From Selaginella moellendorffii (lineage: Eukaryota > Plantae > Lycopodiophyta): DNA of 64,000 nt. A model generated the notes under the pieces. It had not been told where the DNA came from and did no database searches. It saw only the letters and a program-made list of their open reading frames with translations. Positions 39,429-53,645 of the stretch are shown here, one piece after another. The stretch lies in contig NW_003314308.1 of NCBI RefSeq assembly GCF_000143415.4, forward strand, positions 372,001 through 436,000. Direction: 5' to 3'. The number at the start of each line of letters is the position of its first letter. Position 1 is the stretch's first letter. Position numbers and translations under genes: made by a program.

Positions 39429-40233
39429 TTGACTGGGCCTCTAGTGGTAGGAATTTTGCTGATTCGCTTCCTATTATGTCATTGATAATGGTCATGTGAT
39501 GATGCGTCCGCCACCTTTTATAGTTAGGTATGCTCTCTTCTACCAACAACATGTCCAAATACATGGGAGGTGGAAGTCATAAGATCTGTACGGAGTAAGT
39601 TTAAAATTCTCGGGCGGGCGGAAGATTTCGCTGGCGCCGTACGCTTTGTCACTATTGAGTCTCAAGTTCAAATCTTCTTAGCGTCTAGAATGTCCAATAA
39701 TTGATACATTGGCGATTATTTTGACTCGGACATGGATAAGTTTTGATCAAATATCTTTACAATGCGTTGTGGTTGTAGGGTTTGCCGGCGGCTGTTTGAA
39801 TTGTCCGGCCAGCCAATTTTTGTATGTGTGGCCCAAGGCTGACCGATGTTTCTGCCGGTAGATGTATGTAGACAATGTCGATGATGGGCCATGCTAAGTA
39901 CGGCACGATTGTAAACTGTCCAAGAGTGACGTCAGCCCTAGTACGGGTGTGCTCGGTACGACCGCCAAGGGAGAAGATTATCTTTTCTCCCTTATCCCTT
40001 GCCTCGTTCCATTGCGGGCGCATTTAGGGTTTCCATCTTTCCGGCTTCTTTTACTCGCCTTTCTTTATCTTTTATGGTTGCCCTCCCTCTGGAGATAATG
40101 CGCGAGGAACAGGGACGAAGAACACTGCTACCACTGGCGCGGAGGATTTCGCCTAGAATCTGGTGATGGATTGTTGAAATTATGGATTCCTGACGCTCGC
40201 TAGGGCCGGGAAGGAGCCAGCAGCGATCGGTCG

Positions 40234-42219
40234 ATGGCAACGAGCGTCAAGAACGAGCTCCTGGCGGCGTCCCCCCCTCCATTCCACTGGCCGGCGTCGA
40301 TCTTCTCACCTCCTCCTCCTCAATCGCAGCATTCTCTGGCCATGCGCGAAGATTGTGGCAGCGGCGTGTGGGATCACTGCTCCGCGGCGGCTGGATCGGG
40401 CGCTCTCTCGCCGCTGAGCGAGTATCTCATGCAGCCGGACGAGGAAATCTTGTCCATGTCCTCGCTCGATGCCGCTAGCAGCAGCTTCCAGTCGGGATTG
40501 ACGACGGACGAGGAGGAGGAGCAAGGGTTCTTTGCCGGATTATCGGCGAATTCTTGCTCCTCGGCCTCCAACACGTCCCCCTCCTCGGCCTCTCACCACT
40601 ACCAGCAATTCGACCCCAACAGCCCGCCCGGCAACGTCCTCCTCCACTCGGTGGTGCGCTCCAAAATCCACGAGATCAACAGCAGGCTCTTCGACGACGA
40701 GGACGACGGCATCGATCAGCTCATCACGACCGACGGCGTCGTCATCGATTCCTCGCCCTCGCTGGAGCAGCAGCACGGCTACCAGCCCGTGGCGATGCCG
40801 CCGCCAGCGCCGATTCTCCCATTCCGCTCACACCAGGACTCGTTTGGGACGATACGATCGTTCGATTTCCAGCAGCCCATCCAGCCGGCCTTCGCGAGCT
40901 GGACGCACGGTACGTGGCACGTCCACCCCACGGTGCCGCCGCCGCTGCCGCCGGCGGTACGCGGGCCGGCGTGGCAGCACCGCGGAGGTATACCGCACGG
41001 TACGGTGCCTGTGCCGCCGGCGCCGGCAAGCACCGTGGCGGTGCCGGGCGGTATACCGCACGACGGCTCCCAGGACCCACAGGTGCTACTCGTCCAGCTG
41101 CTAGTGATGTGCGCCCACGCGGTGGCGGAGGACAACGAGAGCATCGCCCAGATGATATTGGCGCGTCTCAGGCAGCACACTGGGCCGGAGGGGACGCCCA
41201 TGGAGAGGCTGGCGTCCTACTTCACCGAGGCGCTTGCCGCGCGGATCGATCACTCCACGGGCTCTGCCCTCTTCAAGGGCCTGCTCAGCGACAAGCTGCT
41301 CGAGTCGGATGGATCCACGCAGGCCAGCATGCTCGAGGCGTTCAGCACCTTCTACGACTACCTCCCCATCGGCAAATTCGACCACCTCACCATGAACCAG
41401 GTAATCCTCGACGCCGTGGAGCGCGAGCGCGCCATCCACATCCTCGACCTCCAGCTCTGGTTTGGCACCCAATGGCCGGCGCTGCTGCAAGCTCTCGCAA
41501 CTCGCCCCGGAGGACCACCTAGAGTGAGGATCACGGCAGTGGGCTCTTCCGCGGACGACCTAGCAGCCACTGGCGACAAGCTCCACGAGTGTGCCAAGAC
41601 GCTGCGCGTCCATCTCGTGTACAAGGCCTTGCTACTGCCCAAGGCGGACAAGTTCCATGCCGGGCTCGTCAACCTCCATCCCGGCGAGGCCTTCATCGTC
41701 AACAGCCTCAGCCAGTTCCACTACCTCCTGCAGCCCTCCACTTCCGACTCGGACACCTCCTTCGGCGGATTCATGGCTCACATCCGAGCTCTCCGGCCCA
41801 AGGTGCTCGTCATGGCGGAGAACGACGCCAGCCACAACAGCTCCGACTTTCTCAAGCGATTCGGGGAGTGTCTCAAGTACTACTCGGCGGTGTTCGACGC
41901 CATGGCGACGTGCGCGAGCTCGCCCAGCGGGAGGTTGAAGATGGAGAGGCTCTTTGCGGCGCCAAAGATCCGGAACATCATCGCGTGCGAGGGGCCTAAC
42001 CGGGTGGAGCGTCACGAGAGCATGGCGGACTGGAGCAAGCGGCTGGAGGTGGCGGGGTTTCGGCCATCGCCGCTCAGCCAGAGGGCCGTCAACCAGGCCA
42101 AGCTGCTACTCCGCCTCTACTACACGAATGGCTACACGCTCCACAGCGAGAGAGGCTCGCTGGTTCTCGGGTGGAGGAATTTGCCGCTCAACACGGTATC
42201 GGCCTGGAGAGTCGCGTGA
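40234..42219 (+). CDS. GRAS transcription factor, intronless
   Basis: LVQLLVMCAHAV, MERLASYFTEAL, IHILD, QWPALLQALATRPGGPP, RVERHE and LVLGW..VSAW. Confidence 0.95.
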   Translation: MATSVKNELLAASPPPFHWPASIFSPPPPQSQHSLAMREDCGSGVWDHCSAAAGSGALSPLSEYLMQPDEEILSMSSLDAASSSFQSGLTTDEEEEQGFFAGLSANSCSSASNTSPSSASHHYQQFDPNSPPGNVLLHSVVRSKIHEINSRLFDDEDDGIDQLITTDGVVIDSSPSLEQQHGYQPVAMPPPAPILPFRSHQDSFGTIRSFDFQQPIQPAFASWTHGTWHVHPTVPPPLPPAVRGPAWQHRGGIPHGTVPVPPAPASTVAVPGGIPHDGSQDPQVLLVQLLVMCAHAVAEDNESIAQMILARLRQHTGPEGTPMERLASYFTEALAARIDHSTGSALFKGLLSDKLLESDGSTQASMLEAFSTFYDYLPIGKFDHLTMNQVILDAVERERAIHILDLQLWFGTQWPALLQALATRPGGPPRVRITAVGSSADDLAATGDKLHECAKTLRVHLVYKALLLPKADKFHAGLVNLHPGEAFIVNSLSQFHYLLQPSTSDSDTSFGGFMAHIRALRPKVLVMAENDASHNSSDFLKRFGECLKYYSAVFDAMATCASSPSGRLKMERLFAAPKIRNIIACEGPNRVERHESMADWSKRLEVAGFRPSPLSQRAVNQAKLLLRLYYTNGYTLHSERGSLVLGWRNLPLNTVSAWRVA

Positions 42220-43248
42220 TCTCTTGAAAGTTGGATCGATCGATCGATGGGACAATGGAAAGTTTTCTCTCTTTTTACTTTCGTTTTTTTATCATATCAC
42301 TTCGGTCTTCGATTCAACAAAGCGAGTTGGCTCTCTGCAAGCTTGGAACGATCGATCTATCGATCGGATTTTTATTCGAGTAGAGACTGAAAGAAATTGT
42401 GGTTTGTAGCTTTTTTCCCAATTGAGCTCCCCTGTGCATAGGATTTGGCAAGGAATCCAATAAGGTTCGCTCTAGATACCCCTCGAGTCAATCAATCAGC
42501 CAAGAAAAAAATGGCATCTTCTGGGAATCTCCGGTCCCTCTAGTGTCGACACGAAATGGATAAGGCTGGGTTTCTTTTTTTCTTCTTCTTGTGGTGCTGC
42601 ACTGTGGCGATTTTTTGGATGGAAGCACACAACGCGACCCTTCGCGGAGAAAAAATTAGTTATTTTTATCGCAAAGCCTTTGTTGGATTGCTACGTGCAC
42701 CACTTTGAGGGCAAGAAATTCTCGTGTGTTTGGGAAAGGTGGTGGCGCACAAAGGATCTTCGCAAGAGCATATCGCATTACATTCTCTACCAGTGGGTTG
42801 AGTCGAGATTTCGAATAATCTTGCAATGAAAGTGGCTGGATCCAACTCGATCCATCCATAGATCGATCCAACAAAAAATCGAAAGGGCACAGACAGGAGA
42901 GCGGATTGTTTACGTGAAGTTTGTTCGATAGCTACCTCTCGCTCTGTCCTTGCAGTATTTTTTTCCTCCTTCTCCAAGCTCCAAAACAATCTTTCTCTCT
43001 GCATTTGGTGGCACAGCTGGTCCACACAGATATATGTTCACAAAACTCATTTCCATTCACTCTGGTCAGCCACAGCGTCGCTTTCGATCGATCGCATTCA
43101 CGCCATAGCCAAGAACACAAGACACCTTACCAGCTCGAGCCAATTTGAAGCTCCCAGACAAGCGCCATAGAATAAAGAAGATAATGATAGGCCGAGAACC
43201 CTAATTGAATACCATCCGTTGGATGGTCCTATATCCAACGGCTAACAT

Positions 43249-45654
43249 TTGATTAAGCCGAATATTCTCGCTCTGGCAAGACATGGCCTTGGCCTCGTCG
43301 CCGATTTCGCCAACGCGATCAAGAGCTGCAAGGATCTCCACAAATGCCGGCTTCTCCACAGCAAGATCCTCTCCGGCCCCTGCAATCACGACCGATACCT
43401 CTCCAATCTCCTCATCGACACGTATGGCAAGCTGGCCAGTATCGAGAGCGCTCGCGCCGTCTTCCACGCGATGGGCGATCCCAATCACTTCTCCTGGAAC
43501 ATCTTGCTGGGCGCATTCGCCCAGAATGCCCACATCGACGACGCGAAGACCACTTTCGATCGCATGCCGCAGTGGGATCTCGTCTCGTGGAACGCGCTAA
43601 TCTCCGCATTTGCCCATCACGGGCATTCGGAGGAGGCCAAGGCGATGTTCCTGGCGATGGAGAATCGTGACGTCGTGTCCTGGAGCTCCGTGATCAAAGC
43701 CTACGCGCAGTCCGGACTCGTCGATAAGGCCTCGCAAGTCATGGATCGCATTCCCAAATGGGACGTCCAATCCATCACCGGCATGGTCGCAGCATTTGCC
43801 CAGAACGGGCACCTTGACGCTGCGAGCGCGATGTTCGATCGAATGGAAGAACGCAACGTCGTCGTGTGGACGGCGCTCATCACCGGCCTCTCGCTGAGTT
43901 ACCAGATCGAAGAGGCGGAGACAATCTTTAGATTGATCCCCGGGAGGGACGTGATCGCGTGGAACGCGATGATCACGGCGTATAGCCAAAATGGCGACCC
44001 CCACACGGCCAAGCTCCTCTTCGACGTAATGCCGGAGCGCAACGTGGTGACGTGGACGACCCTGATTGTCGTGCTGGCAGACCACGGTGACCTGTGCGAC
44101 GGACGCGGTACCTACCTGCGGATGCCGCACGTCAACGTAGTAGCGTCCAATGCGATGATCCAGGCCAACGCCCACCACGGTGAGCACGACGCGGCAAAAG
44201 GAATCTTTGACGGGATGCGAGAGTGGGACCTTGTCTCCTGGAACTGTCTTCTCACGCTCTACACGGAGGCAGGGAACCTCGCTGACGTGGAGGGCGTCTT
44301 CCACGCCATGCCCGACCGGGATGACGTGTCGCGCAACGCGATGCTTGCGGCGTATGTCCGCTGGGGCCACCTGGACAGCGCCACGTGCCTGTTTGACGCG
44401 ATGCCACGTCGCGGGATCGTGTGCTGGAACACCATGGTCACCGCGCACGCCAATGCGGGCGTCACCGCGCGGGCGAAGTGGCTTTACGACACCATGCCGC
44501 AGTGGAATATCCTTTCGGTCACGGCGATGCTCACCGCGTACTCTAACCGCGCGTTTGTAGAAGATGCCGAGGATCTCTTCATGCGGCTGCCGCAGCGCAC
44601 CGCGGTAGCGTGCAACATTATGATCGTGATGTACAGCGAACAGGAGGATCTAGAATCAGCGGTCGGCATATTTTCTAAGATGCCACAGCACGATCTTATC
44701 TCGTGGAACGCGCTTGTTTCAGCATATGCCGCAAATGGGCATCCGCTGCAAGCGAGAGTTTCTCTCGATTCCATGCCCAAGAGAGACGTGGTATCGTGGA
44801 CGACGGTGGTGGCTGGATATACCCAAACTGGTGATATCGACAAGGCCATCTCCGCCATGAATCGGATGCCAATGTGGGATCTCGTGACCTGGAACGTGAT
44901 GATCTCGGCGTACGCAGGGATTGGAAACTGTGTCATAGCAAAGAAAATGTTTGATGACAAGCAGCAACGGAATCTCATCTCATGGAATGGACTGATCGCG
45001 GCCTACGCCCAAACCGGAAACTTGGCACTCGCGGTCGCCAGCTTCCACAAGATGCCCGAATGGGACTCCATCTCTTGGATCGGGCTCATCGTGGCCTACG
45101 CGCAATGCGGCCACGTATCCGACGCCTGTGCGATGTTCGAGGATATCCCTTCCCGCGGGACGCTGGCGTTCTCCGCGATCCTGGGGGCATATGCCCACAC
45201 TGGGTATCACAGCGAGGCCGGGGAGGTCTTCCGGGCAATGCAGCTCGAGGGCGTACGTCCAACCAAGGTTTCGTACATGGCGCTTCTCACAGGTTTCAGC
45301 TATGGCGGGATGCTGGACGAGTGCCGAGAGGCCTTCGTGGGGATGCTGTCGTCGGGGATCTCTCCGGCGATCCAGCACTTTCGCAGCGTTGTCGACGTTA
45401 TCGGGCGAGCAAAGGACCCGGGGGATGCGGAAGAACTGATCAGAACGATGCCGTATGTGGCGGACTCGGTGGTGTGGACGTCGCTGCTCGGGGCGTGTCG
45501 CATGCACGGGGATCTGGAGAGAGCGGCGCTGGCGGCAAGAAAGGTGACGGAGCTCGAGCCCGACATCTCGGTTCCGTATGTGCTGCTGGCCGAGATGATC
45601 AAGAGCGAGAGTGGCAGCGACAGTGACGAGCTCGCGAAAGGTATAGATTCGTGA
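43249..45654 (+). CDS. PLS-class PPR protein with a long S-motif array and an E domain
   Basis: About 20 tandem 31-aa motifs and E tail VVWTSLLGACRMHG..PYVLLAEM. First in-frame ATG at 43471. Confidence 0.9.
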   Translation: MIKPNILALARHGLGLVADFANAIKSCKDLHKCRLLHSKILSGPCNHDRYLSNLLIDTYGKLASIESARAVFHAMGDPNHFSWNILLGAFAQNAHIDDAKTTFDRMPQWDLVSWNALISAFAHHGHSEEAKAMFLAMENRDVVSWSSVIKAYAQSGLVDKASQVMDRIPKWDVQSITGMVAAFAQNGHLDAASAMFDRMEERNVVVWTALITGLSLSYQIEEAETIFRLIPGRDVIAWNAMITAYSQNGDPHTAKLLFDVMPERNVVTWTTLIVVLADHGDLCDGRGTYLRMPHVNVVASNAMIQANAHHGEHDAAKGIFDGMREWDLVSWNCLLTLYTEAGNLADVEGVFHAMPDRDDVSRNAMLAAYVRWGHLDSATCLFDAMPRRGIVCWNTMVTAHANAGVTARAKWLYDTMPQWNILSVTAMLTAYSNRAFVEDAEDLFMRLPQRTAVACNIMIVMYSEQEDLESAVGIFSKMPQHDLISWNALVSAYAANGHPLQARVSLDSMPKRDVVSWTTVVAGYTQTGDIDKAISAMNRMPMWDLVTWNVMISAYAGIGNCVIAKKMFDDKQQRNLISWNGLIAAYAQTGNLALAVASFHKMPEWDSISWIGLIVAYAQCGHVSDACAMFEDIPSRGTLAFSAILGAYAHTGYHSEAGEVFRAMQLEGVRPTKVSYMALLTGFSYGGMLDECREAFVGMLSSGISPAIQHFRSVVDVIGRAKDPGDAEELIRTMPYVADSVVWTSLLGACRMHGDLERAALAARKVTELEPDISVPYVLLAEMIKSESGSDSDELAKGIDS

Positions 45655-45855
45655 ACTCGCTTTCGTGCTTTCTTCCTTGTGTCCAAATGGTGGACTCCCA
45701 AGCTTGGAGCTTCGGTAAAGACAAAAGAGATCCCGAGACAAACCACGTCAAGTCAAGGGTGGGCGATTTTAGGAAATCGAGACGGACAGTGATCGCAATC
45801 TATCTTGGCCAGCAATGGCAATAGCAAACGACAGTGATATCTAGCTTGGCCAGAA

Positions 45856-47634
45856 ATGGCAATAGCACGAAGATCTCCACTGCTGCTAGCTTTGCTCTTG
45901 GCGATTTCCAGCTCCTCGCTTCTTCACGGCCATCACATCTCTAGCTGCCGTTGCCTCCACGGCGATCCAAATTGCTGGCCCCAGGATCGCGACTGGAAGA
46001 TCTTCAATGCCTCAATCCAAGGCCGGCTCATCGCGGTCAAGCCCCCGGCATGGCCTTGCCACGATCCCCAGTACGACCATCATCTCTGCGAGCTCGCCAC
46101 CGAGAATTGGAGCGATCCCACCTGGAGATCCGACCAGCCGGGAGCGATGATGGCCGATAACTGGGAGATGGACGACGCCCGCAACGAGAGCTGCTCCATC
46201 CGCGACCCGAGGAGCTCGCGTTGCGAGCAAGGGTCAGTGCCGGTCTACGCGGTCAATGTTAGTCACGTCTTCCAGGTGGAGCTTGCGGTGGCTTTCGCTA
46301 GCAAGCACAACCTTCTCCTTGTGGTAAAGAACACTGGTCACGACTACCTTGGAAGAAGCACTGCGAGGGGATCGCTCAGCATTTGGATGCATCACTTGCG
46401 GGAGCTGCGCTTTCACGGTGATCTTGGCTGTGATCAAGCAGAGCATTGCGACGATCTAGGGCTAGATCCAGCGGCGTATGTGACGATTGGAGCTGGAGTG
46501 ACTTGGAACCAGCTCTACGAGGCCGCGCTGGAGCACAGGCGCGATATTGTGGGAGCTTCGTGCCCGTGGGTTGGAGCTGCCGGTGGATTCGCACAAGGTG
46601 GCGGGCACAGCTTGCTCTCTCCAGTCTTTGGCCTCGCGGCGGACAATGTTGTGGAGCTCCAAGTTGTGACGGCTGATGGGAAGCGAAAGGTGGCGAGCGA
46701 GTGCCAAAACGAGGATCTCTTCTGGGCGCTCAGAGGTGGCGGCGGAGGTACGTTTGGAGTCGTGGTTTCACTCACTTACAGAACGTATCCGGCTCTCGAG
46801 AACGCAATCTTTGCGAGCGTGAATGTGACTGCCAAAGATCGCCCCAGTTTTGAGACGCTTCTCGAGGAGTTTGCACGGATGAATCCGGAGCTTTCATCTG
46901 ATGGCTGGTCTGGTTTCTTCAATGTCGGCAACTTTTCACTCTCCTTGAGATACGTGCTTCCAAACAAGACCTTGGCATTCGCTCGCTCCAGCTTGAATTT
47001 TCTCCTCGGCTTCCAGCACAACCGGATTCAAACCCACTATTCTCTCAAATCCTACGCATCCTTCTACGAGCTCATTCAGCAAGCACTGTGCGGAAGCGAT
47101 CCAAGCTGTCCCAACGTTGGCGGGCTGGCAGGGAATCCAGTTCTTCCAGCTTCACGTCTTATCCCAACTCAAGCTCTAAACTCTTTCCCAACCAAAGTCT
47201 CTAGAGCACTCGCGAAGATAGCTCTCGACTTCCAAGTTCCAATCGTGGGTGCCTTCGTCGCTGGTGGCCAAGTCTCTGTGCCTCGGGACAGCGCCGTGAA
47301 TCCCGCCTGGAGAGATTCGCTGTGGCTCGTCATTGTTTCGGTGAGCGCCCCAAGATCACAGAGAAAAGAGGCAGCGACGCTGGTCTCGAGGGCCAACAAG
47401 GTGTTGATCGATATCACACCCGGATCTGGGAGCTACATGAACGAGGCCGACTACAACGAGCCACACTTCCACAGATCGTTCTTTGGAAGTCATTACAAGC
47501 GGCTCTACGAGATCAAGCAGCGCGTGGATCCGGGAGGGCTCTTTGTGTGCCATCACTGCGTAGGGAGCGAGGACTGGACCCAGGATCTTAGATGCAAAAC
47601 CCAGTCAAACAAGTCAATCAACAAGATTGACTAA
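45856..47634 (+). CDS. Secreted FAD-linked oxidoreductase (BBE/VAO fold), fungal-type signature, intronless
   Basis: Signal peptide; CRCLHGDPNCWP; VVKNTGHDYLGRSTARGSLSIWMHHL; GASCPWVGAAGG; [19 protein letters not shown]; SYMNEADYNEP..YKRLYEIKQRVDP..CVGSEDW. Confidence 0.92.
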   Translation: MAIARRSPLLLALLLAISSSSLLHGHHISSCRCLHGDPNCWPQDRDWKIFNASIQGRLIAVKPPAWPCHDPQYDHHLCELATENWSDPTWRSDQPGAMMADNWEMDDARNESCSIRDPRSSRCEQGSVPVYAVNVSHVFQVELAVAFASKHNLLLVVKNTGHDYLGRSTARGSLSIWMHHLRELRFHGDLGCDQAEHCDDLGLDPAAYVTIGAGVTWNQLYEAALEHRRDIVGASCPWVGAAGGFAQGGGHSLLSPVFGLAADNVVELQVVTADGKRKVASECQNEDLFWALRGGGGGTFGVVVSLTYRTYPALENAIFASVNVTAKDRPSFETLLEEFARMNPELSSDGWSGFFNVGNFSLSLRYVLPNKTLAFARSSLNFLLGFQHNRIQTHYSLKSYASFYELIQQALCGSDPSCPNVGGLAGNPVLPASRLIPTQALNSFPTKVSRALAKIALDFQVPIVGAFVAGGQVSVPRDSAVNPAWRDSLWLVIVSVSAPRSQRKEAATLVSRANKVLIDITPGSGSYMNEADYNEPHFHRSFFGSHYKRLYEIKQRVDPGGLFVCHHCVGSEDWTQDLRCKTQSNKSINKID

Positions 47635-47666
47635 AAGTGACATAATCCAACTAAGTAATATCAAAT

Positions 47667-47737
47667 GCGCAGCTGGTGTAGTGGTATCATAGTACCCTCC
47701 CACGGTACTGACCGGGGTTCGATTCCCCGGCTGCGCA
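47667..47737 (+). tRNA. tRNA-Gly (CCC)
   Basis: Acceptor stem GCGCAGC/GCTGCGC, anticodon arm GTACC-CTCCCAC-GGTAC, T arm with GGTTCGATTCC, upstream CAA and downstream TTTT terminator. Confidence 0.97.
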
Positions 47738-47833
47738 ATTTTAAATAAATACGTGGCTTTTGCCACGTGGACAATTTTTTTTTCTTTTGACATGTCACGT
47801 GTTTTACTTCCAGAGAATGTAGGGTTCTTGAGG

Positions 47834-48292
47834 ATGAGGGCGCTGCTTTCCCTGGTGCGCCCAGCCTGTGGTTTTGTTTCTCGAGCGATCTCTCCCTCTC
47901 GATCGCGCTATGCCACTCATCAGATCTTCACTGCATCGGCCAGAAACCAGCCATGGGGATTCCGTGGATTCACATCGTCGAGGATTCTGGGCACGGTGTA
48001 CGAGGACGTGAGGAGGGAGCTACGGTGGAAGAAGCGCAAGAAGCTCATCAGATTGGGGCTCAAGAAGAGGAAGAGGAAGAAGAAGCGCAGGGGGAAGGGG
48101 ATCTGGGCGGAGCCTTGCAAGGCGGAGCAAGAGCGGCAGAAGGATCACTCGCGCTGCATCATCGCGCCCTACGCCGACGCGCAGATGTGGCCCAGGATGA
48201 GCTGCGAGCGCGACCGCCGGCACGTCCTCAAGGCCTTGAACACTACGCTCGTCCACTTCGGCCAGATCAATAGCACCATGAGAAGGGAGTAG
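47834..48292 (+). CDS. Small basic protein with a mitochondrial-presequence-like N-terminus, unknown function
   Basis: MRALLSLVRPACGFVSRAISPSRSRY.. is R/S-rich with no acidic residues, followed by a K/R tract. GC-rich codons. Upstream G-box/ABRE pair and telo-like tagggtt. Confidence 0.55.
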   Translation: MRALLSLVRPACGFVSRAISPSRSRYATHQIFTASARNQPWGFRGFTSSRILGTVYEDVRRELRWKKRKKLIRLGLKKRKRKKKRRGKGIWAEPCKAEQERQKDHSRCIIAPYADAQMWPRMSCERDRRHVLKALNTTLVHFGQINSTMRRE

Positions 48293-48410
48293 TCGATTGG
48301 TAGAGCTAGAGATGGAATGCCAGAGCTTAGATATCGCGGGAGTGGATTCCATGCTGGAGGGGCATTTTCTCTCCCTGGCAGCATTTGCCCAGAATGGGCA
48401 TTTGGAGGCA

Positions 48411-49884
48411 AACTAGTCAACTATGCTGACCATGGTTGACTTATTTGACTGGAATTTTGCACCTAAGGTCTTGGGTCCGGTCCTCGCTCCCTACGCAGTG
48501 ATGCTGCTTGATCTCATAGAGCGGCTTGTAGTGGCTTCCATAAAACGATCTCTGGAAGTGTGGCTCGTTGTAGTTGGCCTCGTTCATGTGGCTCCCAGAT
48601 CCAGGCGTGATATCGATCAACAAGCATTGTTGCCTCTCTCCTTTGTGATCTCGGAGCATTCACGAAGGCAATGACGAGCAACAGGGAATCTCTCAAGGCG
48701 GGATTAACTGCGTTGTTGCGAAGCACCGAGACTTGGCCGCCAGCGATGACGCAGCCCAGGATTGGAACCTGAAAGTCGAGAGGTATCGTCAGGAGTGCTC
48801 GAGAAGCTTTGGCTGGGCAAAGTTGGGACGAGACGTGAAGCTGGAAGAACTGGATATCACAGTTTGGATTGATGATTTTGTAGAGGGATGTATAGGATTG
48901 GAAAGAATAGTGTGTCTGAATCTGGCTGTGCTGGAAGCCGAGGAGAGAACTCAAGCTGGAGCGAGCCTTGTTTGGAAGTACGTATCTCAAGGGGGGAGAA
49001 GTTTCTGATATCGAAAAAACCAGACCAGCCATGAGATGAAAGCTCCGGATGCACCCGCGCAAACTCCTCGACGAGCGTCTCAAAGCTTGGGCGATCTTCG
49101 GCAGTCAAGTCACGCTTGAAAAGATTGTGTTCTCGAAACTGTAAGTGAGTGAAACCACGACTCTCCGCCGCCACCTCTGAGAGCCCAAAAGAGATCCTCG
49201 TTCTGGCACTTGTTCGCCACCTTTCGCTTCCCATCAGCCGTCACGACTTGGAGCTCCACAACATTGTCGGAAACGCTGGAGCGAGCAAGCGCCCACAATC
49301 TCGCGCCTGTGCTCCATCGCCGCCACGTAGAGCGGTTCCAAGTCCGATCGCCACATACGCCGCTGGATCTCGCCCTCGATCACAGCCAAGATCACCGTGA
49401 GAGCGCACCTCTTGCAAGTGATGCATCCAAATGCTGAGCGCTCCCCTCGCAGTGCTCCTTCCACTGTAGTCGAAAGCCTCCACCTGGGAGACTTGACTAA
49501 CATTGACCGCGTAGACCGGCACTGACCCTTGCTCGCGAGCCGGGATCGCGCCAATTCTCGGTGGCGAGCTCGCAGAGACGATGGTTGTAGTGGGGATCGT
49601 GATGAGCCGGCCTGGCCTTGAAGATCTTCCAGTCGCAATCGTGGGGCCGTGGCTAGAGATCCCGGGCTTGGCGAGGCGCTGGAAATCGCCAAGAGCAATG
49701 TTAGTAGGAGTGGAGCCATTGCTGGTCTAGCTAGATTGTGATCACTGTCTATTTTATTTCGCGGGAGTGATTAAGATCGTTCTCCGATCACATGGGTTGT
49801 CTTTGGAATCTTTACAGATTGACAGCCAAGGAAGCAAGAAAACGAATTCATGGATCTATACTTTTTGCGAGCTCGACTGTTGTT
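48411..49884 (-). pseudogene. Inverted, deletion-riddled copy of the FAD oxidoreductase locus (source ~45620-47635)
   Basis: Remnants [35 protein letters not shown] and DITPGSGSHMNEANYNEPHF. Also copies the promoter and the last codons of the upstream PPR gene. Confidence 0.92.
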
Positions 49885-49953
49885 GGCAGCATTTGCCCAG
49901 AATGGGCATTTGGGGGAGGCATAGATTTTGCTGCGAGAGATCATCGATGATCA

Positions 49954-51669
49954 TCAAGTTCTACTCGCCAAGTTCGTCACAAGTGCGTAAGCTGCCGCAT
50001 CTTCATTCACCACAGCCAAATTCTCGAAGGCCATCTTTCCGAGAGCCACATTTTCCCACTTGTGACAAGCACCCAGCACGGTCTTCCACGCCACCGGAGT
50101 GACTCCATCGCTACTACGATCCACCATTGCTTTGGACACCGTCGCCACGGCGAGATCCATCTCGTTACTCCGTCCCAGGCCGTCAACCAGGCAATTGTAG
50201 TGCTGCGAGCTCGGCGAAACTCCAAACTTGGAGCTCATGATCTCCAAGAACTCCGAGCACAGTCTTACATCACCGGCGTGGCTGCAAGCAGAGAGGATGT
50301 GCACGAAAGTTATGGCGTTCGCTGCTAGCCCCTCGTCGATCATCCTGTGGAACAACCCCACCACCGTGCGAGCGTCACCTCTCCTGCTGAATCCCGCCAT
50401 CAAAGAGTTCCAAGTTACCGGATCTCTCGCCTCCATGGCCGAGTCGAAGACGAACTGGGCGTTTTGCAAGCTTCCACACTTGCCGTAGACGTCGACGAGG
50501 CTGTTTGCTACGACGGTGTTGGCCTCGAAGCCGGACCTCGCGACGTGAGCATGGAGAAGCTTGCAAACTTCCGTCGATGGAACGCAGGAGCCACAGGCCT
50601 TGAGAGCTGCGACGAGAGTGAAAACATCCGGCTCGACTTGCTGCTCGCGTTTCATCCTGGAGAAGAGCTCCAGTGCCATGCCGGGGTCACCGGTTTCTAC
50701 ACACCCGAGTATGATCGAGTTCCACGAGACCACGTCGCGGCGAAAAGTCTCGAAAACCCGGCGAGCGTCGTCCAGGCTTCCACACGCTGCGTACGAATCC
50801 ACCAGGCCGTTGTGGAGGATGCCATCCGAGCTGAAAAACCCGGCCTTTGCTGCTCGAGAGTGAATCGCCATGACCATCTCCAGGCTCCTCACTTTGACGA
50901 TCTTTCCAGCGGCGAGCTCGCCATCTTCTCTCGATGCGAGACCGACGCAAGCTTTGAGAGCAGCACTGAAAGTCCGGCCGTTCGGTTCGCAGGCTTCTTC
51001 GATCCGAGAGAAAGCCACCAAAGCCGATTCTTCCATCCGATTCTCCGCGAAGCCGAGAATGATCGTGTTCCAAGACACCACGTCTCGGCATCGCATTCTC
51101 GAGAAGACCCTGTAAGCGTCGTCCATGCTTCCACACCTCGAGTACATGTCCACCAGCGCGTTTGCCACGAACAAGTCGGAGTCGAAGCTTTCCACTCGAG
51201 CTTGGCGGTGGAAAGCCATGCCTTTCTCCAAGCTCCTCATCTTGACCACCGAGTTTCTTCCTCCATCCTTGCTCCATCTCTCTTCTCTAGCCGCCAGACC
51301 AGAGCAGGCCTTGAGCAGCGCCACGAAAGTCCGAGCGTTTGGAGCACAGCCACCTGCGAGCATTCGATGGAAGAGCTCAAAGACTTGGATTTCTTGCTTG
51401 GACTCTACGTACCCGAGCATCAGGGCGGTCCAGGAGACGACGTTGGGAGCGCGAATTTTGTCCAGGGCTCTGCGAGCATCCACCAGACCTCCACACCTCG
51501 CGTAGGCGTGGACGATCTTGCTCGCAATGTAGACGTTTGCGTCCATTCCACTCTGGATGGCGGCAAGGTGGGCTTCTCTCGCCATCCAAAGGCTTTTGGA
51601 GCTGATAGAGCCATCGAGCGCCGCGAGCAAGGCGCAAAATTTCGAGCTTGCGCTCGTTCTTCCCTCCAA
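49954..51669 (-). CDS. PLS-class PPR protein with extended L motifs and an E domain
   Basis: VDMYSRCGSMDDAYRVF..DVVSWN repeats and E tail VAWKTVLGACHKW..AYALVTNL. Confidence 0.9.
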   Translation of the reverse strand: MEGRTSASSKFCALLAALDGSISSKSLWMAREAHLAAIQSGMDANVYIASKIVHAYARCGGLVDARRALDKIRAPNVVSWTALMLGYVESKQEIQVFELFHRMLAGGCAPNARTFVALLKACSGLAAREERWSKDGGRNSVVKMRSLEKGMAFHRQARVESFDSDLFVANALVDMYSRCGSMDDAYRVFSRMRCRDVVSWNTIILGFAENRMEESALVAFSRIEEACEPNGRTFSAALKACVGLASREDGELAAGKIVKVRSLEMVMAIHSRAAKAGFFSSDGILHNGLVDSYAACGSLDDARRVFETFRRDVVSWNSIILGCVETGDPGMALELFSRMKREQQVEPDVFTLVAALKACGSCVPSTEVCKLLHAHVARSGFEANTVVANSLVDVYGKCGSLQNAQFVFDSAMEARDPVTWNSLMAGFSRRGDARTVVGLFHRMIDEGLAANAITFVHILSACSHAGDVRLCSEFLEIMSSKFGVSPSSQHYNCLVDGLGRSNEMDLAVATVSKAMVDRSSDGVTPVAWKTVLGACHKWENVALGKMAFENLAVVNEDAAAYALVTNLASRT

Positions 51670-51883
51670 TCGCTGTGATTTCGTGTTGTTTGTAAGCTCC
51701 CCGCTGCTATGGCAAGAACATGAAGGAATTTCGCGCTTCCACAGAATGGAAATCGATCAGTCGCGAGCTCCACAGTGTGAATTGAGAGGTTTACCTGCTG
51801 GATCGAGAAATACGACATCGATGCCAAAATCCCCAAGAACCCTAAAATATTGTTCTTTCCCTTCATTAGGGTTTATCGGGATC

Positions 51884-53645
51884 ATGCGGGATGCGCCTTC
51901 GTTCCGCGCTTCCGCGATCTTCATTGCGGCCGTCGCCGTGCTGATTCGTCTTCTCACAGGCCTCCATTCGTATTCTGGTCAGTTTTCTCGCGAAGAAATC
52001 TCGCTTCTTGAATCGGATCTCTTCCAGGCGCTGGAAATCCTCCCAAGTATGGAGATTACGAAGCGCAGCGGCACTGGATGGAGCTAACGATCAACCTGCC
52101 CGTCTCGGACTGGTACCGCAACACTACTGACAACGATCTTGGCTACTGGGGCCTGGATTATCCTCCTCTCACGGCCTACCAGAGCTACATACATGGAGTT
52201 TTCATGCGAAAGTTTGACGAGCAGTCGGTTGCATTGCATTCTTCCAGAGGCTATGAATCTCTCCACAGGTATGTCATGCTCTAGTTGCGCTTCTCCTTTT
52301 CATTTCTCTAACTTGCAAGTCTGGGCAGCAAGGTTCTCATGCGATGGACTGTGGTGTTATCGGACCTTGCTATTTTTTTCCCGGCAGCTATAGCTTTCGT
52401 TGCGGCTTATTATCGCCAGAGAAGTCATGAAGAGCGTGTCTGGGTTCTAGCGCTTATTCTGTTGCAACCGGCTCTGATATTGATCGATCACGGACACTTT
52501 CAGGTTCTCTTCTTCCGCACTCTTGTTTCTAAGTTTTCTGGCATTGCGTTCTTCCAGTATAACTGTCTGAGCCTGGGATTGGCGATTGGTGCCGCGGCAG
52601 CAGTCATTTCAAGGTGGGAGATAGTAGCGTGTGTTTTATTTTCATTGTCGCTTAATCACAAGCAGGTAAAGCCGACTATAGCTCAACAAATTCTCATGAA
52701 TGCGTACTTTTGCAGATGAGCATGTATTACGCTCCCGCGTTCTTTTCGCATCTCCTGGGGATTTCTTTGAGAAAGAAGTATCCGGTGCTGAATGTTTTGA
52801 AGCTTGGAGCTGCCGTTTTATCGACTTTTGCTCTTTGCTGGTGGCCATTTTTGCATTCCAGAGAAGCAGTATTACAGGTAATCAAACCATCGGTAATACC
52901 CGTGCTTTACATGTTTCTACACAGGTTCTGAGTCGCCTGGTTCCAATCCATCGGGGATTGTTTGAGGACTACGTGAGCAATTTTTGGTGTGTTTCTAACC
53001 TGCTCATAAAGTGGAAACAGCTGCTCCCAGATCGAGTGCTTGTTCAGCTTGCGTTCGTCGCCACTTTGGCCTGTATACTGCCGTCTATGCTTCAGCAGAT
53101 ACTCAGGCCAAGCAGGAGAGGCTTCCTCCTGGCGATGTTCAATTGCTCGTTTGCCTTCTATTTCTTCTCTTACCAAGGTGACTATCTTCGATTGGTATTT
53201 TGTACCGCTGACTTGCTAAAGCTTTTGGTTGTCAGTGCACGAGAAATCTATTCTTCTTCCTGTAATTCCGGGAACGCTTCTCGCTTTAGACGAGCCACTC
53301 GTTTGGAGATGGCTGATACCAGGTGCACTCATGTCCATGTTCCCTTTGCTCGTTCGAGATGGTCTCCTGCTCCCATATTTCGCGTTGCTGCTGCTCTTCT
53401 TCCTCGGTTTTGTTCCACTCAGGAGTTTCAACCCAGTAGCAGCATCCTCACTGCTTGGTGGCTTCGTTCTTCATCTCGCTTATCTGCTGCTGGATCCACC
53501 TGCGAGATACCCATACCTTTTTGAGGCTTTTATTGCAACCTACACATTCGCATACTTCGCCGCGATCTTTCTGTACACAAACTACCGCCAGTGGTCCAGG
53601 AGTCGAGTTTTATCGTCGACACAAAAACGGAAAAAGAAAGTATGA
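51884..53645 (+). CDS. ALG6: Dol-P-Glc:Man9GlcNAc2-PP-Dol alpha-1,3-glucosyltransferase
   Basis: YGDYEAQRHWMELT, YWGLDYPPLTAYQS, LIDHGHFQYN, NHKQM and VHEKSILLP, plus a C-terminal KKK ER-retrieval motif. Confidence 0.95.

What the first reader, a model, noticed from the sequence alone, without database searches (positions are those of the whole stretch)
45856..47634. Fungal-type secreted FAD oxidoreductase in a plant: candidate horizontal transfer
Canonical plant BBE-like enzymes carry RSGGHDYEG. This intronless protein has KNTGHDYLGRSxxxGSLSIW, an N-terminal CRCxxGDxCWP..PCHD..C cysteine domain and a CVGSExW end. That architecture is typical of fungal FAD-linked oxidases of secondary metabolism (isoamyl alcohol oxidase/ZEB1-like). 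The His (GHD) and Cys (ASCPWVG) used for bicovalent FAD are both present. It sits among plant genes, next to a tRNA, and has a local decayed duplicate, which argues against contamination. It could supply an undescribed oxidative step in lycophyte specialised metabolism.
Basis: partly seen in the sequence, partly recalled or inferred. Interest (0 to 1): 0.8.

Follow-up and report, generated by a model that had tools for sequence, protein, structure and literature searches.

The report
Fungal-type flavin oxidase gene in Selaginella
An intact, transcribed, intronless gene in the spikemoss Selaginella encodes a secreted flavin oxidase of a type otherwise seen only in fungi, some bacteria and bdelloid rotifers. 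It belongs to a multi-copy family shared only with ferns, so it most likely reached early vascular plants from a fungus, although the trees cannot prove the direction.

Summary

The protein is a VAO/BBE-superfamily flavoprotein of the fungal MtVAO615/MtVAO713 subgroup:
- PDB 6f72 matches at E 4e-85 over the full length. Canonical plant BBE-likes reach only about 1e-18.
- The AF2 model (pLDDT 92) matches 6f72/6f74 at TM 0.82-0.90.
- His162 and Cys236 (bicovalent FAD), gatekeeper Val239 and Glu530 are all in place.

The gene lies between PPR genes and is collinear at 97% with S. moellendorffii scaffold GL377619.1. Contigs of four independent studies cover it without any splice.

It is not a lone gene. 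Selaginella has about 13 intronless loci, and the ferns Adiantum and Ceratopteris carry the family too. No bryophyte, seed plant or alga turned up in two word searches and one exhaustive representative search.

ML trees put all plant copies in one clade next to Calcarisporiella, Basidiobolus and Mortierellomycota. AU tests do not reject plants as sister to all fungal copies (p 0.25 and 0.48). Fungus-to-plant transfer is therefore the best reading (about 0.7), resting on distribution and distances rather than significant nesting.

The substrate is unknown. The scan noted a paralogue in this genome before (s1-380734).

The parts
45793..45855 (+). 5' leader of the transcript. A 41-nt tandem repeat in it creates a 9-codon uORF at 45815-45844.
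   Evidence: The X1 contig begins at 45793 and the X2 contig at 45845. The sequence was read.
45856..47634 (+). Intronless CDS of 592 aa: a secreted VAO/BBE-superfamily flavoprotein oxidase of the MtVAO615 type.
   Evidence: ORF. Pfam. PDB 6f72 at E 4e-85 over aa 10-578. AF2 model pLDDT 92.3. Foldseek 6f72/6f74 at TM 0.82-0.90. X2 contig 45845-47676 with 0 differences and no joints.
45856..45930 (+). Predicted signal peptide (about aa 1-25): MAIARR, then a Leu-rich core, then SSSSLLHG.
   Evidence: Read directly from the sequence. The model has low pLDDT at 1-30 with a helix at 8-18. The first 26 residues of MtVAO615 are a secretion signal (PMC6017366). No signal-peptide predictor was run.
46249..46686 (+). 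FAD_binding_4 domain (aa 132-277). It holds His162 (46339-46341, 8-alpha-histidyl link), Cys236 (46561-46563, 6-S-cysteinyl link), gatekeeper Val239 and His251.
   Evidence: Pfam. Alignment to MtVAO615 His157, Cys222, Val225 and His237. His162 is invariant in 336 homologues.
47431..47556 (+). BBE C-terminal domain (aa 526-567) with Tyr527 and Glu530 (47443-47445). Glu530 stands where other BBE-like oxidases have the catalytic Tyr.
   Evidence: Pfam. Glu530 aligns with MtVAO615 Glu519. Tyr527 and Glu530 are conserved in nearly all homologues.
47666..47738 (+). tRNA-Gly(CCC) gene, 31 nt downstream of the stop codon on the same strand. TTTT and AATAAA follow it.
   Evidence: ARAGORN. Rfam RF00005 at 60.5 bits. 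Sequence.
48433..49749 (-). Decayed inverted duplicate (pseudogene) of the oxidase gene, arranged tail to tail with it.
   Evidence: blastn 68-74% identity and tblastn pieces in three frames. Also present on the other haplotype. Weak contig cover. No Pfam hit for its ORF fragments.
43249..45654 (+). Upstream PPR gene (plant context).
   Evidence: Pfam PPR at E 1e-115.
49954..51669 (-). Downstream PPR gene (plant context).
   Evidence: Pfam PPR_2 at E 9e-54.

Best explanation
The gene encodes a working, secreted, glycosylated and disulfide-rich flavoprotein oxidase of the MtVAO615/MtVAO713 subgroup of the VAO/BBE superfamily.

Mechanism (inferred by homology, not assayed):
- FAD is attached autocatalytically to His162 (8-alpha-N1-histidyl) and Cys236 (6-S-cysteinyl).
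- A substrate C-H bond, most likely that of an alcohol, is oxidised by hydride transfer to the flavin. Glu530 takes the place of the usual catalytic Tyr as base.
- The reduced flavin is re-oxidised by O2 to H2O2. The small gatekeeper Val239 permits this.
- The substrate is unknown.

Origin (inferred): the gene is one of about 13 intronless loci in Selaginella moellendorffii. With fern genes they form a single plant clade that sits beside the genes of early-diverging fungi (Calcarisporiella, Basidiobolus, Mortierellomycota). The family most likely entered an early vascular plant from such a fungus more than about 400 Myr ago, expanded in lycophytes and ferns, and was lost in or never reached seed plants.

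The copy in this window arose by a local inverted duplication. Its partner has since decayed.
For: Enzyme identity:
- Pfam FAD_binding_4 plus BBE.
- 6f72 MtVAO615 at E 4e-85 over aa 10-578, and 6f74 at 4e-67.
- AF2 model pLDDT 92.3, pTM 0.91.
- Foldseek puts 6f74/6f72 at E 1e-48 and TM 0.82-0.90. The next hits (BBE, ChitO, EncM) are near 1e-28.
- His162, Tyr164, Cys236, Val239, His251 and Glu530 align with MtVAO615 His157, Tyr159, Cys222, Val225, His237 and Glu519, whose roles are described in PMC6017366.
- His162, Tyr527 and Glu530 are conserved across 336 homologues.

Expression and integration:
- Contigs from four studies cover 45793-47676 and not the upstream PPR gene. One contig of 1832 nt has 0 differences and no joint.
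- The region is collinear at 97.15% over 13.8 kb with GL377619.1.
- GC3 is 0.63 against 0.68-0.76 in the neighbours.

Family:
- 18 Selaginella protein clusters and 7 fern proteins on chromosome-scale scaffolds.
- The paralogues checked are intronless and in plant context, and one tandem pair has dN/dS 0.27.

Origin:
- No other plant lineage appears among the best 120 hits of two word searches. Among the best 150 of an exhaustive search of 1.84 billion representatives, the only extra member of the plant clade was again Selaginella.
- The 20 unnamed representatives looked up comprised 14 fungi, 1 bdelloid rotifer, 1 Selaginella protein and 4 left unnamed.
- Plants form one clade in the tree without bacteria and in the 50-row tree (SH-aLRT 98 and 95). 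In the 102-row tree they sit unresolved but compatible with one clade. In both bacteria-rooted trees they lie in a 96-98 clade with Calcarisporiella, Basidiobolus, Mortierellomycota and rotifers, while Dikarya, chytrids and Umbelopsis/Mucorales lie outside.
- Selaginella proteins are as similar to Calcarisporiella proteins (44.9%) as to fern proteins (44.7%). They are more similar to Calcarisporiella than Calcarisporiella is to Dikarya (37.5-39.3%).
Against: - AU tests do not reject a tree in which all fungal and rotifer copies form one group and plants lie outside it with the bacterial root. Under LG+F+G4 on 65 rows the difference is 13.2 lnL, p 0.25. Under LG+C20 PMSF on 50 rows it is 0.61 lnL, p 0.48.
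- The bacterial outgroup sits on a long branch and joins the longest eukaryotic branches, so the root is unsure.
- Support values come from quick searches (SH-aLRT only).
- Proteomes of other lycophytes, hornworts and many ferns may be thin in the databases, so absence is provisional.
- No activity has been shown for any plant member, and even MtVAO615 has no known substrate.
- This copy may be under relaxed constraint. Allelic dN/dS is 0.54, and the other haplotype carries C283W in a conserved Cys pair.
- The runs used for expression are only guessed to be RNA.
Confidence: 0.7

Rival explanations
1. Ancient vertical inheritance. The family was present in a common ancestor of plants and fungi and was lost in all other eukaryotes and in all green lineages except lycophytes and ferns.
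For: AU tests do not reject plants as sister to all fungal and rotifer copies (p 0.25; p 0.48). The eukaryotic copies share inserts and Cys pairs that all 61 bacterial copies lack (C113/C123), so there is one eukaryotic ancestor gene.
Against: It needs many independent losses: red and green algae, streptophyte algae, bryophytes, seed plants, animals other than bdelloids, and the other supergroups. None of these appeared. Plant proteins are closer to Calcarisporiella proteins than Calcarisporiella is to Dikarya, Mucorales or Umbelopsis, which is the opposite of what an outgroup position predicts under roughly even rates. The plant stem is very short (0.06-0.13) compared with stems inside fungi.
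Confidence: 0.12
2. Horizontal transfer, but by another route. Either lycophytes and ferns each acquired the gene from related fungi, or one plant lineage passed it to the other, rather than one gain in their common ancestor.
For: Ferns form one clade nested among Selaginella lineages in the ML trees. Seed plants lack the family.
Against: Plants are one clade (SH-aLRT 95-98; the constraint costs 0.9 lnL, p 0.58). Selaginella as one clade is not rejected (p 0.12). One gain followed by lineage-specific expansion therefore remains the simplest account.
Confidence: 0.15
3. Fungal contamination or an assembly artefact, not a plant gene.
For: The nearest non-plant relatives are soil and endophytic fungi.
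Against: The gene is flanked on both sides by PPR genes in one contiguous sequence. The same arrangement, pseudogene included, is found on a 1.39-Mb scaffold of the other haplotype at 97% identity. Paralogues lie among PUF, ABC-transporter and Na/H-exchanger genes. GC3 is like that of the neighbours. The best fungal identity is only about 45-50%.
Confidence: 0.01
4. This particular copy is on its way to becoming a pseudogene like its neighbour. It is transcribed but no longer under effective selection.
For: Allelic dN/dS is 0.54, with 13 amino-acid differences in 592. The other haplotype has C283W in the co-varying pair C198/C283. The adjacent duplicate has decayed.
Against: The reading frame is open in both haplotypes. 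All catalytic and FAD-linking residues are kept, and the window allele keeps Cys283. Contigs are present in four studies. With only 21 differences, 0.54 cannot be told apart from moderate purifying selection.
Confidence: 0.1
5. An ordinary member of the canonical plant BBE-like family (monolignol or carbohydrate oxidases, berberine bridge enzyme).
For: It shares the superfamily Pfam domains.
Against: Plant BBE-likes match only at about 1e-18 and over the FAD domain only, with Foldseek E near 1e-26 and TM about 0.6-0.78 against 1e-48 and 0.82-0.90 for MtVAO615/713. The motif is KNTGHDYLG rather than RSGGHDYEG. Glu530 replaces the catalytic Tyr. All nearest homologues are fungal.
Confidence: 0.01

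Closest known systems
MtVAO615 (XP_003663615; PDB 6f72/6f73), a secreted VAO-type oxidase of Myceliophthora thermophila C1
   Same: The alignment is full-length (aa 10-578, E 4e-85) and the fold matches (TM 0.83/0.90). Shared features are a secretion signal, bicovalent His plus Cys FAD attachment, gatekeeper Val, Glu in place of the catalytic Tyr, and the N-terminal and C-terminal Cys motifs.
   Different: The two share only about 40% identity or less. Pocket residues Tyr449, Cys450 and Asp451 of MtVAO615 are Ile463, Val464 and Gly465 here (read from the alignment), so the substrate probably differs. This protein has an extra Cys412-Cys418 loop, shared with plants, Calcarisporiella and Umbelopsis. 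The host is a plant. MtVAO615 itself has no known substrate.
MtVAO713 (PDB 6f74) and its relatives, named in PMC6017366 as a Hypomyces alcohol oxidase and an ecdysteroid-22-oxidase
   Same: It belongs to the same subgroup (clade II of that paper), with E 4e-67 and TM 0.82/0.85. It has the same Glu and the same overall active-site layout.
   Different: MtVAO713 is monocovalent, with Ser where Cys236 stands here. It has weak activity on ricinoleic acid. Most plant paralogues and all fern copies have that Ser, but the window gene has Cys.
Canonical plant BBE-like oxidases (AtBBE-like 15/28, EcBBE, Phl p 4, PpBBE1, THCA synthase)
   Same: Same superfamily and same two Pfam domains. Many are also secreted and carry bicovalent FAD.
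   Different: They are only distant relatives (E about 1e-18 and 16-21% identity in fold alignments). They lack the N-terminal Cys-rich stretch and use Tyr rather than Glu at the base position. They are spread across land plants, whereas this family is confined to lycophytes and ferns.
Reported fungus-to-plant gene transfers into non-seed plants (Richards et al. 2009, Plant Cell, cited in PMC12448838)
   Same: The same kind of event is proposed: old, rare, and into lycophytes or bryophytes.
   Different: I could not read that paper. As far as I recall, its gene list has no FAD-linked oxidase, but this is memory and not checked. No paper in the searchable library describes this family in plants.

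Membership tests
VAO/PCMH flavoprotein superfamily, BBE-like branch | FAD_binding_4 (PCMH-type) domain followed by a C-terminal BBE domain | tested here: met
   PF01565 at E 1.8e-16 (60.5 bits, cut-off 26.4). PF08031 at E 2.3e-9 (37.6 bits, cut-off 20.6).
VAO/PCMH flavoprotein superfamily, BBE-like branch | His for the 8-alpha-histidyl FAD link in the GHD motif | tested here: met
   His162 aligns with MtVAO615 His157. It is invariant in 336 homologues. The covalent bond itself was not tested.
Bicovalent (6-S-cysteinyl, 8-alpha-histidyl) flavoproteins | Cys at the position of MtVAO615 Cys222 | tested here: met
   Cys236 aligns with Cys222. Among plant copies only the window gene and P0001, P0004, P0006, P0007 and P0008 have it. 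Ferns and most close fungal copies have Ser.
MtVAO615/MtVAO713 subgroup (clade II of PMC6017366) | Full-length similarity, including the extra N-terminal residues and the C-terminal extension | tested here: met
   The match to 6f72 covers aa 10-578 at E 4e-85. Foldseek TM is 0.83/0.90, with a gap of 20 orders of magnitude to the next family.
MtVAO615/MtVAO713 subgroup (clade II of PMC6017366) | Glu in place of the catalytic Tyr, and a small gatekeeper residue that permits reaction with O2 | tested here: met
   Glu530 aligns with Glu519 and Val239 with Val225.
MtVAO615/MtVAO713 subgroup (clade II of PMC6017366) | Oxidase activity (reduced enzyme reacts fast with O2) and secretion | not testable with these tools
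   Only a signal-peptide-like N-terminus and 8 N-glycosylation sequons can be read from the sequence.
Canonical plant BBE-like enzymes | Close sequence kinship with AtBBE-like/EcBBE-type proteins, and the RSGGHDYEG-type motif | tested here: not met
   The best plant BBE-like match is E 1.2e-18, over the FAD domain only. The motif is KNTGHDYLG. All near homologues are fungal, rotifer, Selaginella or fern.
Horizontally acquired gene (fungus to plant) | Physically integrated in the recipient genome and expressed | tested here: met
   PPR neighbours, collinearity between the two haplotypes, and contigs from four studies (that the runs are RNA is a guess).
Horizontally acquired gene (fungus to plant) | Patchy distribution in the recipient lineage and broad distribution in the donor lineage | tested here: met
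   In plants, only Selaginella, Adiantum, Ceratopteris and three unnamed contigs inside the fern clade. In fungi, chytrids through Dikarya. There are 2430 representatives at E<=1e-30. Database cover of other seed-free plants is a caveat.
Horizontally acquired gene (fungus to plant) | Recipient sequences significantly nested inside the donor clade in a rooted tree | tested here: inconclusive
   ML trees rooted on bacteria nest plants in a 96-98 SH-aLRT clade with early-diverging fungi. The AU tests do not reject fungi as one group excluding plants (p 0.25; p 0.48).

The most novel reading that the evidence does not exclude
A secreted flavin oxidase passed from a Mucoromycota- or Zoopagomycota-like fungus, the kind of fungus that lived with the first land plants, into the ancestor of vascular plants before lycophytes and ferns split. 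It was kept and multiplied in both lineages and lost in seed plants. In one Selaginella branch, which holds the window gene, a Ser-to-Cys change restored the second covalent FAD link, raising the redox potential for a new, plant-specific substrate.
Probability: 0.35. Interest if true: 0.65.

Novelty: new member of a known kind. Interest (0 to 1): 0.5.

Why it matters
Well-supported fungus-to-plant gene transfers are few, and most concern single genes. Here a whole expressed family of about 13 loci of secreted, H2O2-producing oxidases is confined to lycophytes and ferns. Its nearest relatives lie in the fungal lineages thought to have partnered with early land plants.

If the transfer is real, it dates a fungus-plant genetic exchange to the origin of vascular plants. 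It also gives a set of plant enzymes with an active site (Glu base, His/Cys-linked FAD) for which no substrate is known in any organism.

The plant paralogues differ naturally at the second FAD-linking position (Cys, Ser, Gly or Ala). They are therefore a ready-made series for studying what bicovalent flavinylation does.

If it is instead an old eukaryotic gene, the loss pattern would be extreme and worth documenting.

Tried and rejected
- Literature: eight full-text searches found the MtVAO615 paper but no description of this family in plants. Richards et al. 2009 is not held, and Ma et al. 2022 was not found.
I fell back on fast searches with three seeds each and on treekit quick trees.
- The AU test on the 102-row mixture-model tree did not finish. 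It was repeated on 50 rows.
- The Cys412-Cys418 loop looked like a marker tying plants to Calcarisporiella and Umbelopsis. A chytrid copy (P0133) also has it, so it may be ancestral and decides nothing.
- Intron state does not discriminate. The Selaginella, fern and Calcarisporiella genes are all intronless.
- The Atlas look-alike search only repeated that the family is mostly ascomycete.
- P0113 (Ceratopteris) could not be located on a contig.
- The species behind the three unnamed contigs in the fern clade could not be determined (SRR7121612 for P0130).
- ORFs in the transcribed spacer 47753-48352 have no Pfam family.
- The third word search was left unused. The exhaustive representative search had already covered the question of other plant members.
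- Read laying was given 5901 letters.
Full report
**Observation.** Window 45856-47634 (+) is a single uninterrupted ORF of 592 codons.
- It has 16 cysteines and 8 N-glycosylation sequons.
- Pfam finds FAD_binding_4 (aa 132-277) and BBE (aa 526-567), both above their curated cut-offs.
- A tRNA-Gly(CCC) gene lies at 47666-47738 on the same strand (ARAGORN; Rfam 60.5 bits).
- An inverted, decayed copy of the gene lies at 48433-49749 (-). It has 68-74% nucleotide identity, is split over three reading frames and carries deletions. One deletion removes the codons around the FAD-linking His (ORF translations).
- The flanking genes are PPR genes.

**Whose genome, and is the gene part of it?**
- The best database hit is a Selaginella moellendorffii protein, P0001, at 97% identity.
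- Its locus on the 1.39-Mb scaffold GL377619.1 is collinear with window 39896-53596 at 97.15% over 13.8 kb, pseudogene included. The window is therefore the other haplotype, or a very close accession, of S. moellendorffii.
- P0001 is also encoded without introns: 1785 bp for 594 aa.
- GC3 of the gene (0.63) is near that of its PPR neighbours (0.68 and 0.76).

Contamination is excluded.

**Expression.**
- Twenty public runs from at least six studies hold the sequence.
- In all four, contigs cover 45793-47676 and leave the upstream PPR gene essentially bare.
- One contig of 1832 nt (45845-47676) matches with no difference and no joint.
- The runs are small contig sets (15-30 Mb) that the tool only guesses to be RNA. 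A DNA library would not leave the neighbours uncovered.

I read this as an unspliced mRNA, with that caveat. The pseudogene and a spacer at 47822-48408 are covered more weakly.

**What the protein is.**
- By sequence, the closest solved structures are the two VAO-type oxidases of the fungus Myceliophthora thermophila: MtVAO615 (6f72, E 4e-85, aligned over aa 10-578) and MtVAO713 (6f74, E 4e-67).
- All canonical plant BBE-like proteins, EncM, carbohydrate oxidases and the rest reach only about 1e-18 to 1e-20, over the FAD domain alone.
- An AlphaFold2 model built on 91 homologues is confident (mean pLDDT 92.3, pTM 0.91). Only residues 1-30, a loop near 190 and the last 20 residues score low.
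- Foldseek against the PDB again puts 6f74 and 6f72 first (E about 1e-48, TM 0.82-0.90). The next group is 20 orders of magnitude behind.

The paper on these enzymes (PMC6017366) reports the following:
- Both are secreted, and the first 26 residues are the signal.
[quoted passage not shown] MtVAO713 has Ser at the Cys position and is monocovalent.
- Both have Glu (Glu519/Glu543) where other family members have the catalytic Tyr.
- A small gatekeeper residue (Val225) fits their fast reaction with O2.
- The apparent N-terminal extension is mostly loops of the FAD domain, not a separate domain.
- No substrate was found for MtVAO615. MtVAO713 shows only weak activity on ricinoleic acid.

In the alignment, the window protein has His162, Tyr164, Cys236, Val239, His251 and Glu530 at the positions of His157, Tyr159, Cys222, Val225, His237 and Glu519. 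Across 336 homologues His162 is invariant, and Tyr527, Glu530 and Val239 are nearly so. Some pocket residues differ: MtVAO615 Tyr449, Cys450 and Asp451 correspond to Ile463, Val464 and Gly465 here.

The mechanism I infer is a secreted, bicovalently flavinylated oxidase. It takes a hydride from a substrate, probably an alcohol, with Glu530 as base, and passes the electrons to O2, giving H2O2. The substrate is unknown. Every step here is inferred from homology, and none was assayed.

**The family in plants.** The gene is not alone.
- The word search and a profile search with a plant-only alignment found 18 Selaginella protein clusters. Counting allelic pairs once, this is about 13 loci.
- The same searches found seven proteins of the ferns Adiantum capillus-veneris, A. 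nelumboides and Ceratopteris richardii, the first and last on scaffolds of 181 and 198 Mb.
- The paralogues I looked up are also intronless. Some sit in tandem pairs and all lie among ordinary plant genes. A fern gene is intronless too.
- A tandem Selaginella pair has dN/dS 0.27 at dS 0.47, so the family is under purifying selection.
- The two alleles of the window gene give dN/dS 0.54 on only 21 differences. The other haplotype has C283W in a co-varying Cys pair (C198/C283). Constraint on this copy may therefore be weaker.
- Cys236 is present only in the window gene and five other Selaginella rows. Ferns and the nearest fungal copies mostly have Ser, while all 61 bacterial homologues have Cys. 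The window gene thus belongs to a predicted bicovalent minority of the plant family.

**Distribution outside plants.**
- After the plant hits come Calcarisporiella thermophila, Basidiobolus, many Mortierellomycota, Umbelopsis, chytrids, Dikarya, and a large set of bdelloid rotifer proteins.
- An exhaustive HMM search of 1.84 billion representatives gave 2430 proteins at E<=1e-30. In a tree of the best 150 with the named sequences, the only new member of the plant clade was another Selaginella protein.
- I looked up 20 unnamed representatives. Fourteen were fungi, one was a bdelloid rotifer, one was that Selaginella protein and four carried no name.
- No bryophyte, seed plant or alga appeared. 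Three unnamed Logan contigs fall inside the fern clade, and their species could not be determined.
- Bacteria hold full-length homologues at 30-34% identity (Mycolicibacterium, Legionella, Coxiellaceae, Bradyrhizobium, Acidobacteria and others). They form one clade on a long branch and lack the eukaryotic C113-C123 insert.

**Trees.**
- Without bacteria (135 rows, LG+C20 PMSF, quick search), all plant sequences form one clade (SH-aLRT 98). Ferns form one clade (99) among four Selaginella lineages. The plant clade lies in a 97 clade with Calcarisporiella, Basidiobolus, Mortierellomycota and the rotifers.
- With bacteria as outgroup (102 and 50 rows), the 50-row tree again shows plants as one clade (95), and the 102-row tree leaves them unresolved but compatible with one clade. 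Both place them in that same 96-98 clade. Umbelopsis/Mucorales, Basidiomycota, Ascomycota and chytrids branch outside.
- Taken at face value, this nests plants inside fungi.

The AU tests do not back this up statistically. Holding all fungal and rotifer copies together, with plants and the bacterial root on the other side, costs 13.2 lnL under LG+F+G4 (p 0.25). It costs only 0.61 lnL under LG+C20 PMSF (p 0.48). The bacterial branch is long and joins the longest eukaryotic branches, so the root is unsure. Plant monophyly (p 0.58) and Selaginella monophyly (p 0.12) are not rejected either.

**Weighing the origin.** The trees alone cannot tell transfer from very old vertical descent. Three other observations favour transfer from a fungus.
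1. Distribution. The family is found in every fungal phylum sampled, but in plants only in lycophytes and ferns. Vertical descent from the plant-fungus ancestor would need losses in nearly all other eukaryotes.
2. Distances. Selaginella proteins are as similar to Calcarisporiella proteins (44.9%) as to fern proteins (44.7%). They are more similar to Calcarisporiella than Calcarisporiella is to Dikarya (37.5-39.3%), Mucorales (39.8%) or Umbelopsis (42.2%). An outgroup position predicts the reverse under roughly even rates.
3. Branch lengths. The plant stem is very short (0.06-0.13) next to stems inside fungi.

I put fungus-to-plant transfer at about 0.7. Most of that is a single gain before the lycophyte-fern split, followed by loss in seed plants. 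Vertical descent with massive loss gets about 0.12. The rest goes to other routes.

Intron state does not help, because the Calcarisporiella gene is intronless too. The bdelloid rotifer clade is a separate transfer of the same kind of gene.

**Comparison with what is known.**
- The protein is a member of the MtVAO615/MtVAO713 subgroup by every feature I could test, and it is not a canonical plant BBE-like enzyme.
- RefSeq already names these Selaginella proteins 'uncharacterized FAD-linked oxidoreductase ARB_02478' after a dermatophyte protein. The fungal likeness is thus implicit in public annotation.
- In eight full-text searches I found no paper that describes the family in plants or proposes its transfer.
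- Two large screens that might list it could not be read: Richards et al. 2009 is not held, and Ma et al. 2022 was not found.
- The scan's own notes hold one more first-reader note on a 1776-letter paralogue in this genome with the same idea (s1-380734). The P0005 gene that I looked up is also 1776 bp long and intronless.

**Verdict.** It is a new plant member of a known enzyme subgroup and of a known kind of event, and it is of moderate interest. The main open points are the root of the tree, the sampling of other seed-free plants, and the substrate.

Noticed in passing
window 47632-47750: The tRNA-Gly(CCC) gene starts 31 nt after the oxidase stop codon on the same strand. A TTTT run and then AATAAA follow it directly. 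One contig (X1, 47494-47728) runs from the end of the ORF into the tRNA, so the mRNA 3' UTR may contain the tRNA.
   Followed up: partly
window 45804-45867: A 41-nt tandem repeat in the 5' leader copies the start of the ORF. It creates a 9-codon upstream ORF (45815-45844), out of frame with the main ATG. The X1 contig starts at 45793, so the uORF is within the transcript.
   Followed up: no
window 47822-48408: Contigs of runs X1 and X10 (and short ones of X2) cover the spacer between the tRNA and the pseudogene. The ORFs there (47753-48292 +, Lys/Arg-rich; 48020-48352 -) have no Pfam family. This may be an unannotated transcript.
   Followed up: partly
window 48433-49749 (-): Contigs of three runs weakly cover the decayed duplicate, so it may still be transcribed. 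It is also present on the other haplotype.
   Followed up: partly
L001 6001-7785 (GL377619.1): The allele on the other haplotype (P0001) differs at 13 residues and by a 2-residue indel. One difference is C283W, which removes one Cys of a pair (C198/C283) that co-varies across the family. Allelic dN/dS is 0.54.
   Followed up: partly
L003-L082 (bacterial genome contigs): Full-length bacterial homologues at 30-34% identity occur in Mycolicibacterium, Legionella, Coxiellaceae, Bradyrhizobium, Acidobacteria, Myxococcota and others. All 61 that were scored have Cys at the 6-S-cysteinyl position. They form one clade. The Legionella/Coxiellaceae/Neisseriales group aligns from the very N-terminus.
   Followed up: partly
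P0033, P0039, P0074-P0134 (bdelloid rotifer proteins): A large clade of bdelloid rotifer copies (Adineta, Rotaria, Didymodactylos) sits among the same early-diverging fungal copies. This looks like an independent transfer into rotifers.
   Followed up: no
L083 6204-7453 (-) and L084 7850-11767: Selaginella paralogues occur as tandem or near-tandem pairs. A 401-aa FAD_binding_4 fragment lies next to P0005. P0045 and P0029 lie side by side, both intronless, with dN/dS 0.27.
   Followed up: partly
aa 412-418 of the window protein (window 47089-47109): A short Cys-x5-7-Cys loop near the active-site entrance is shared by Selaginella, ferns, Calcarisporiella, Umbelopsis and one chytrid copy. Mortierellomycota, rotifers, Dikarya and bacteria lack it.
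   Followed up: yes
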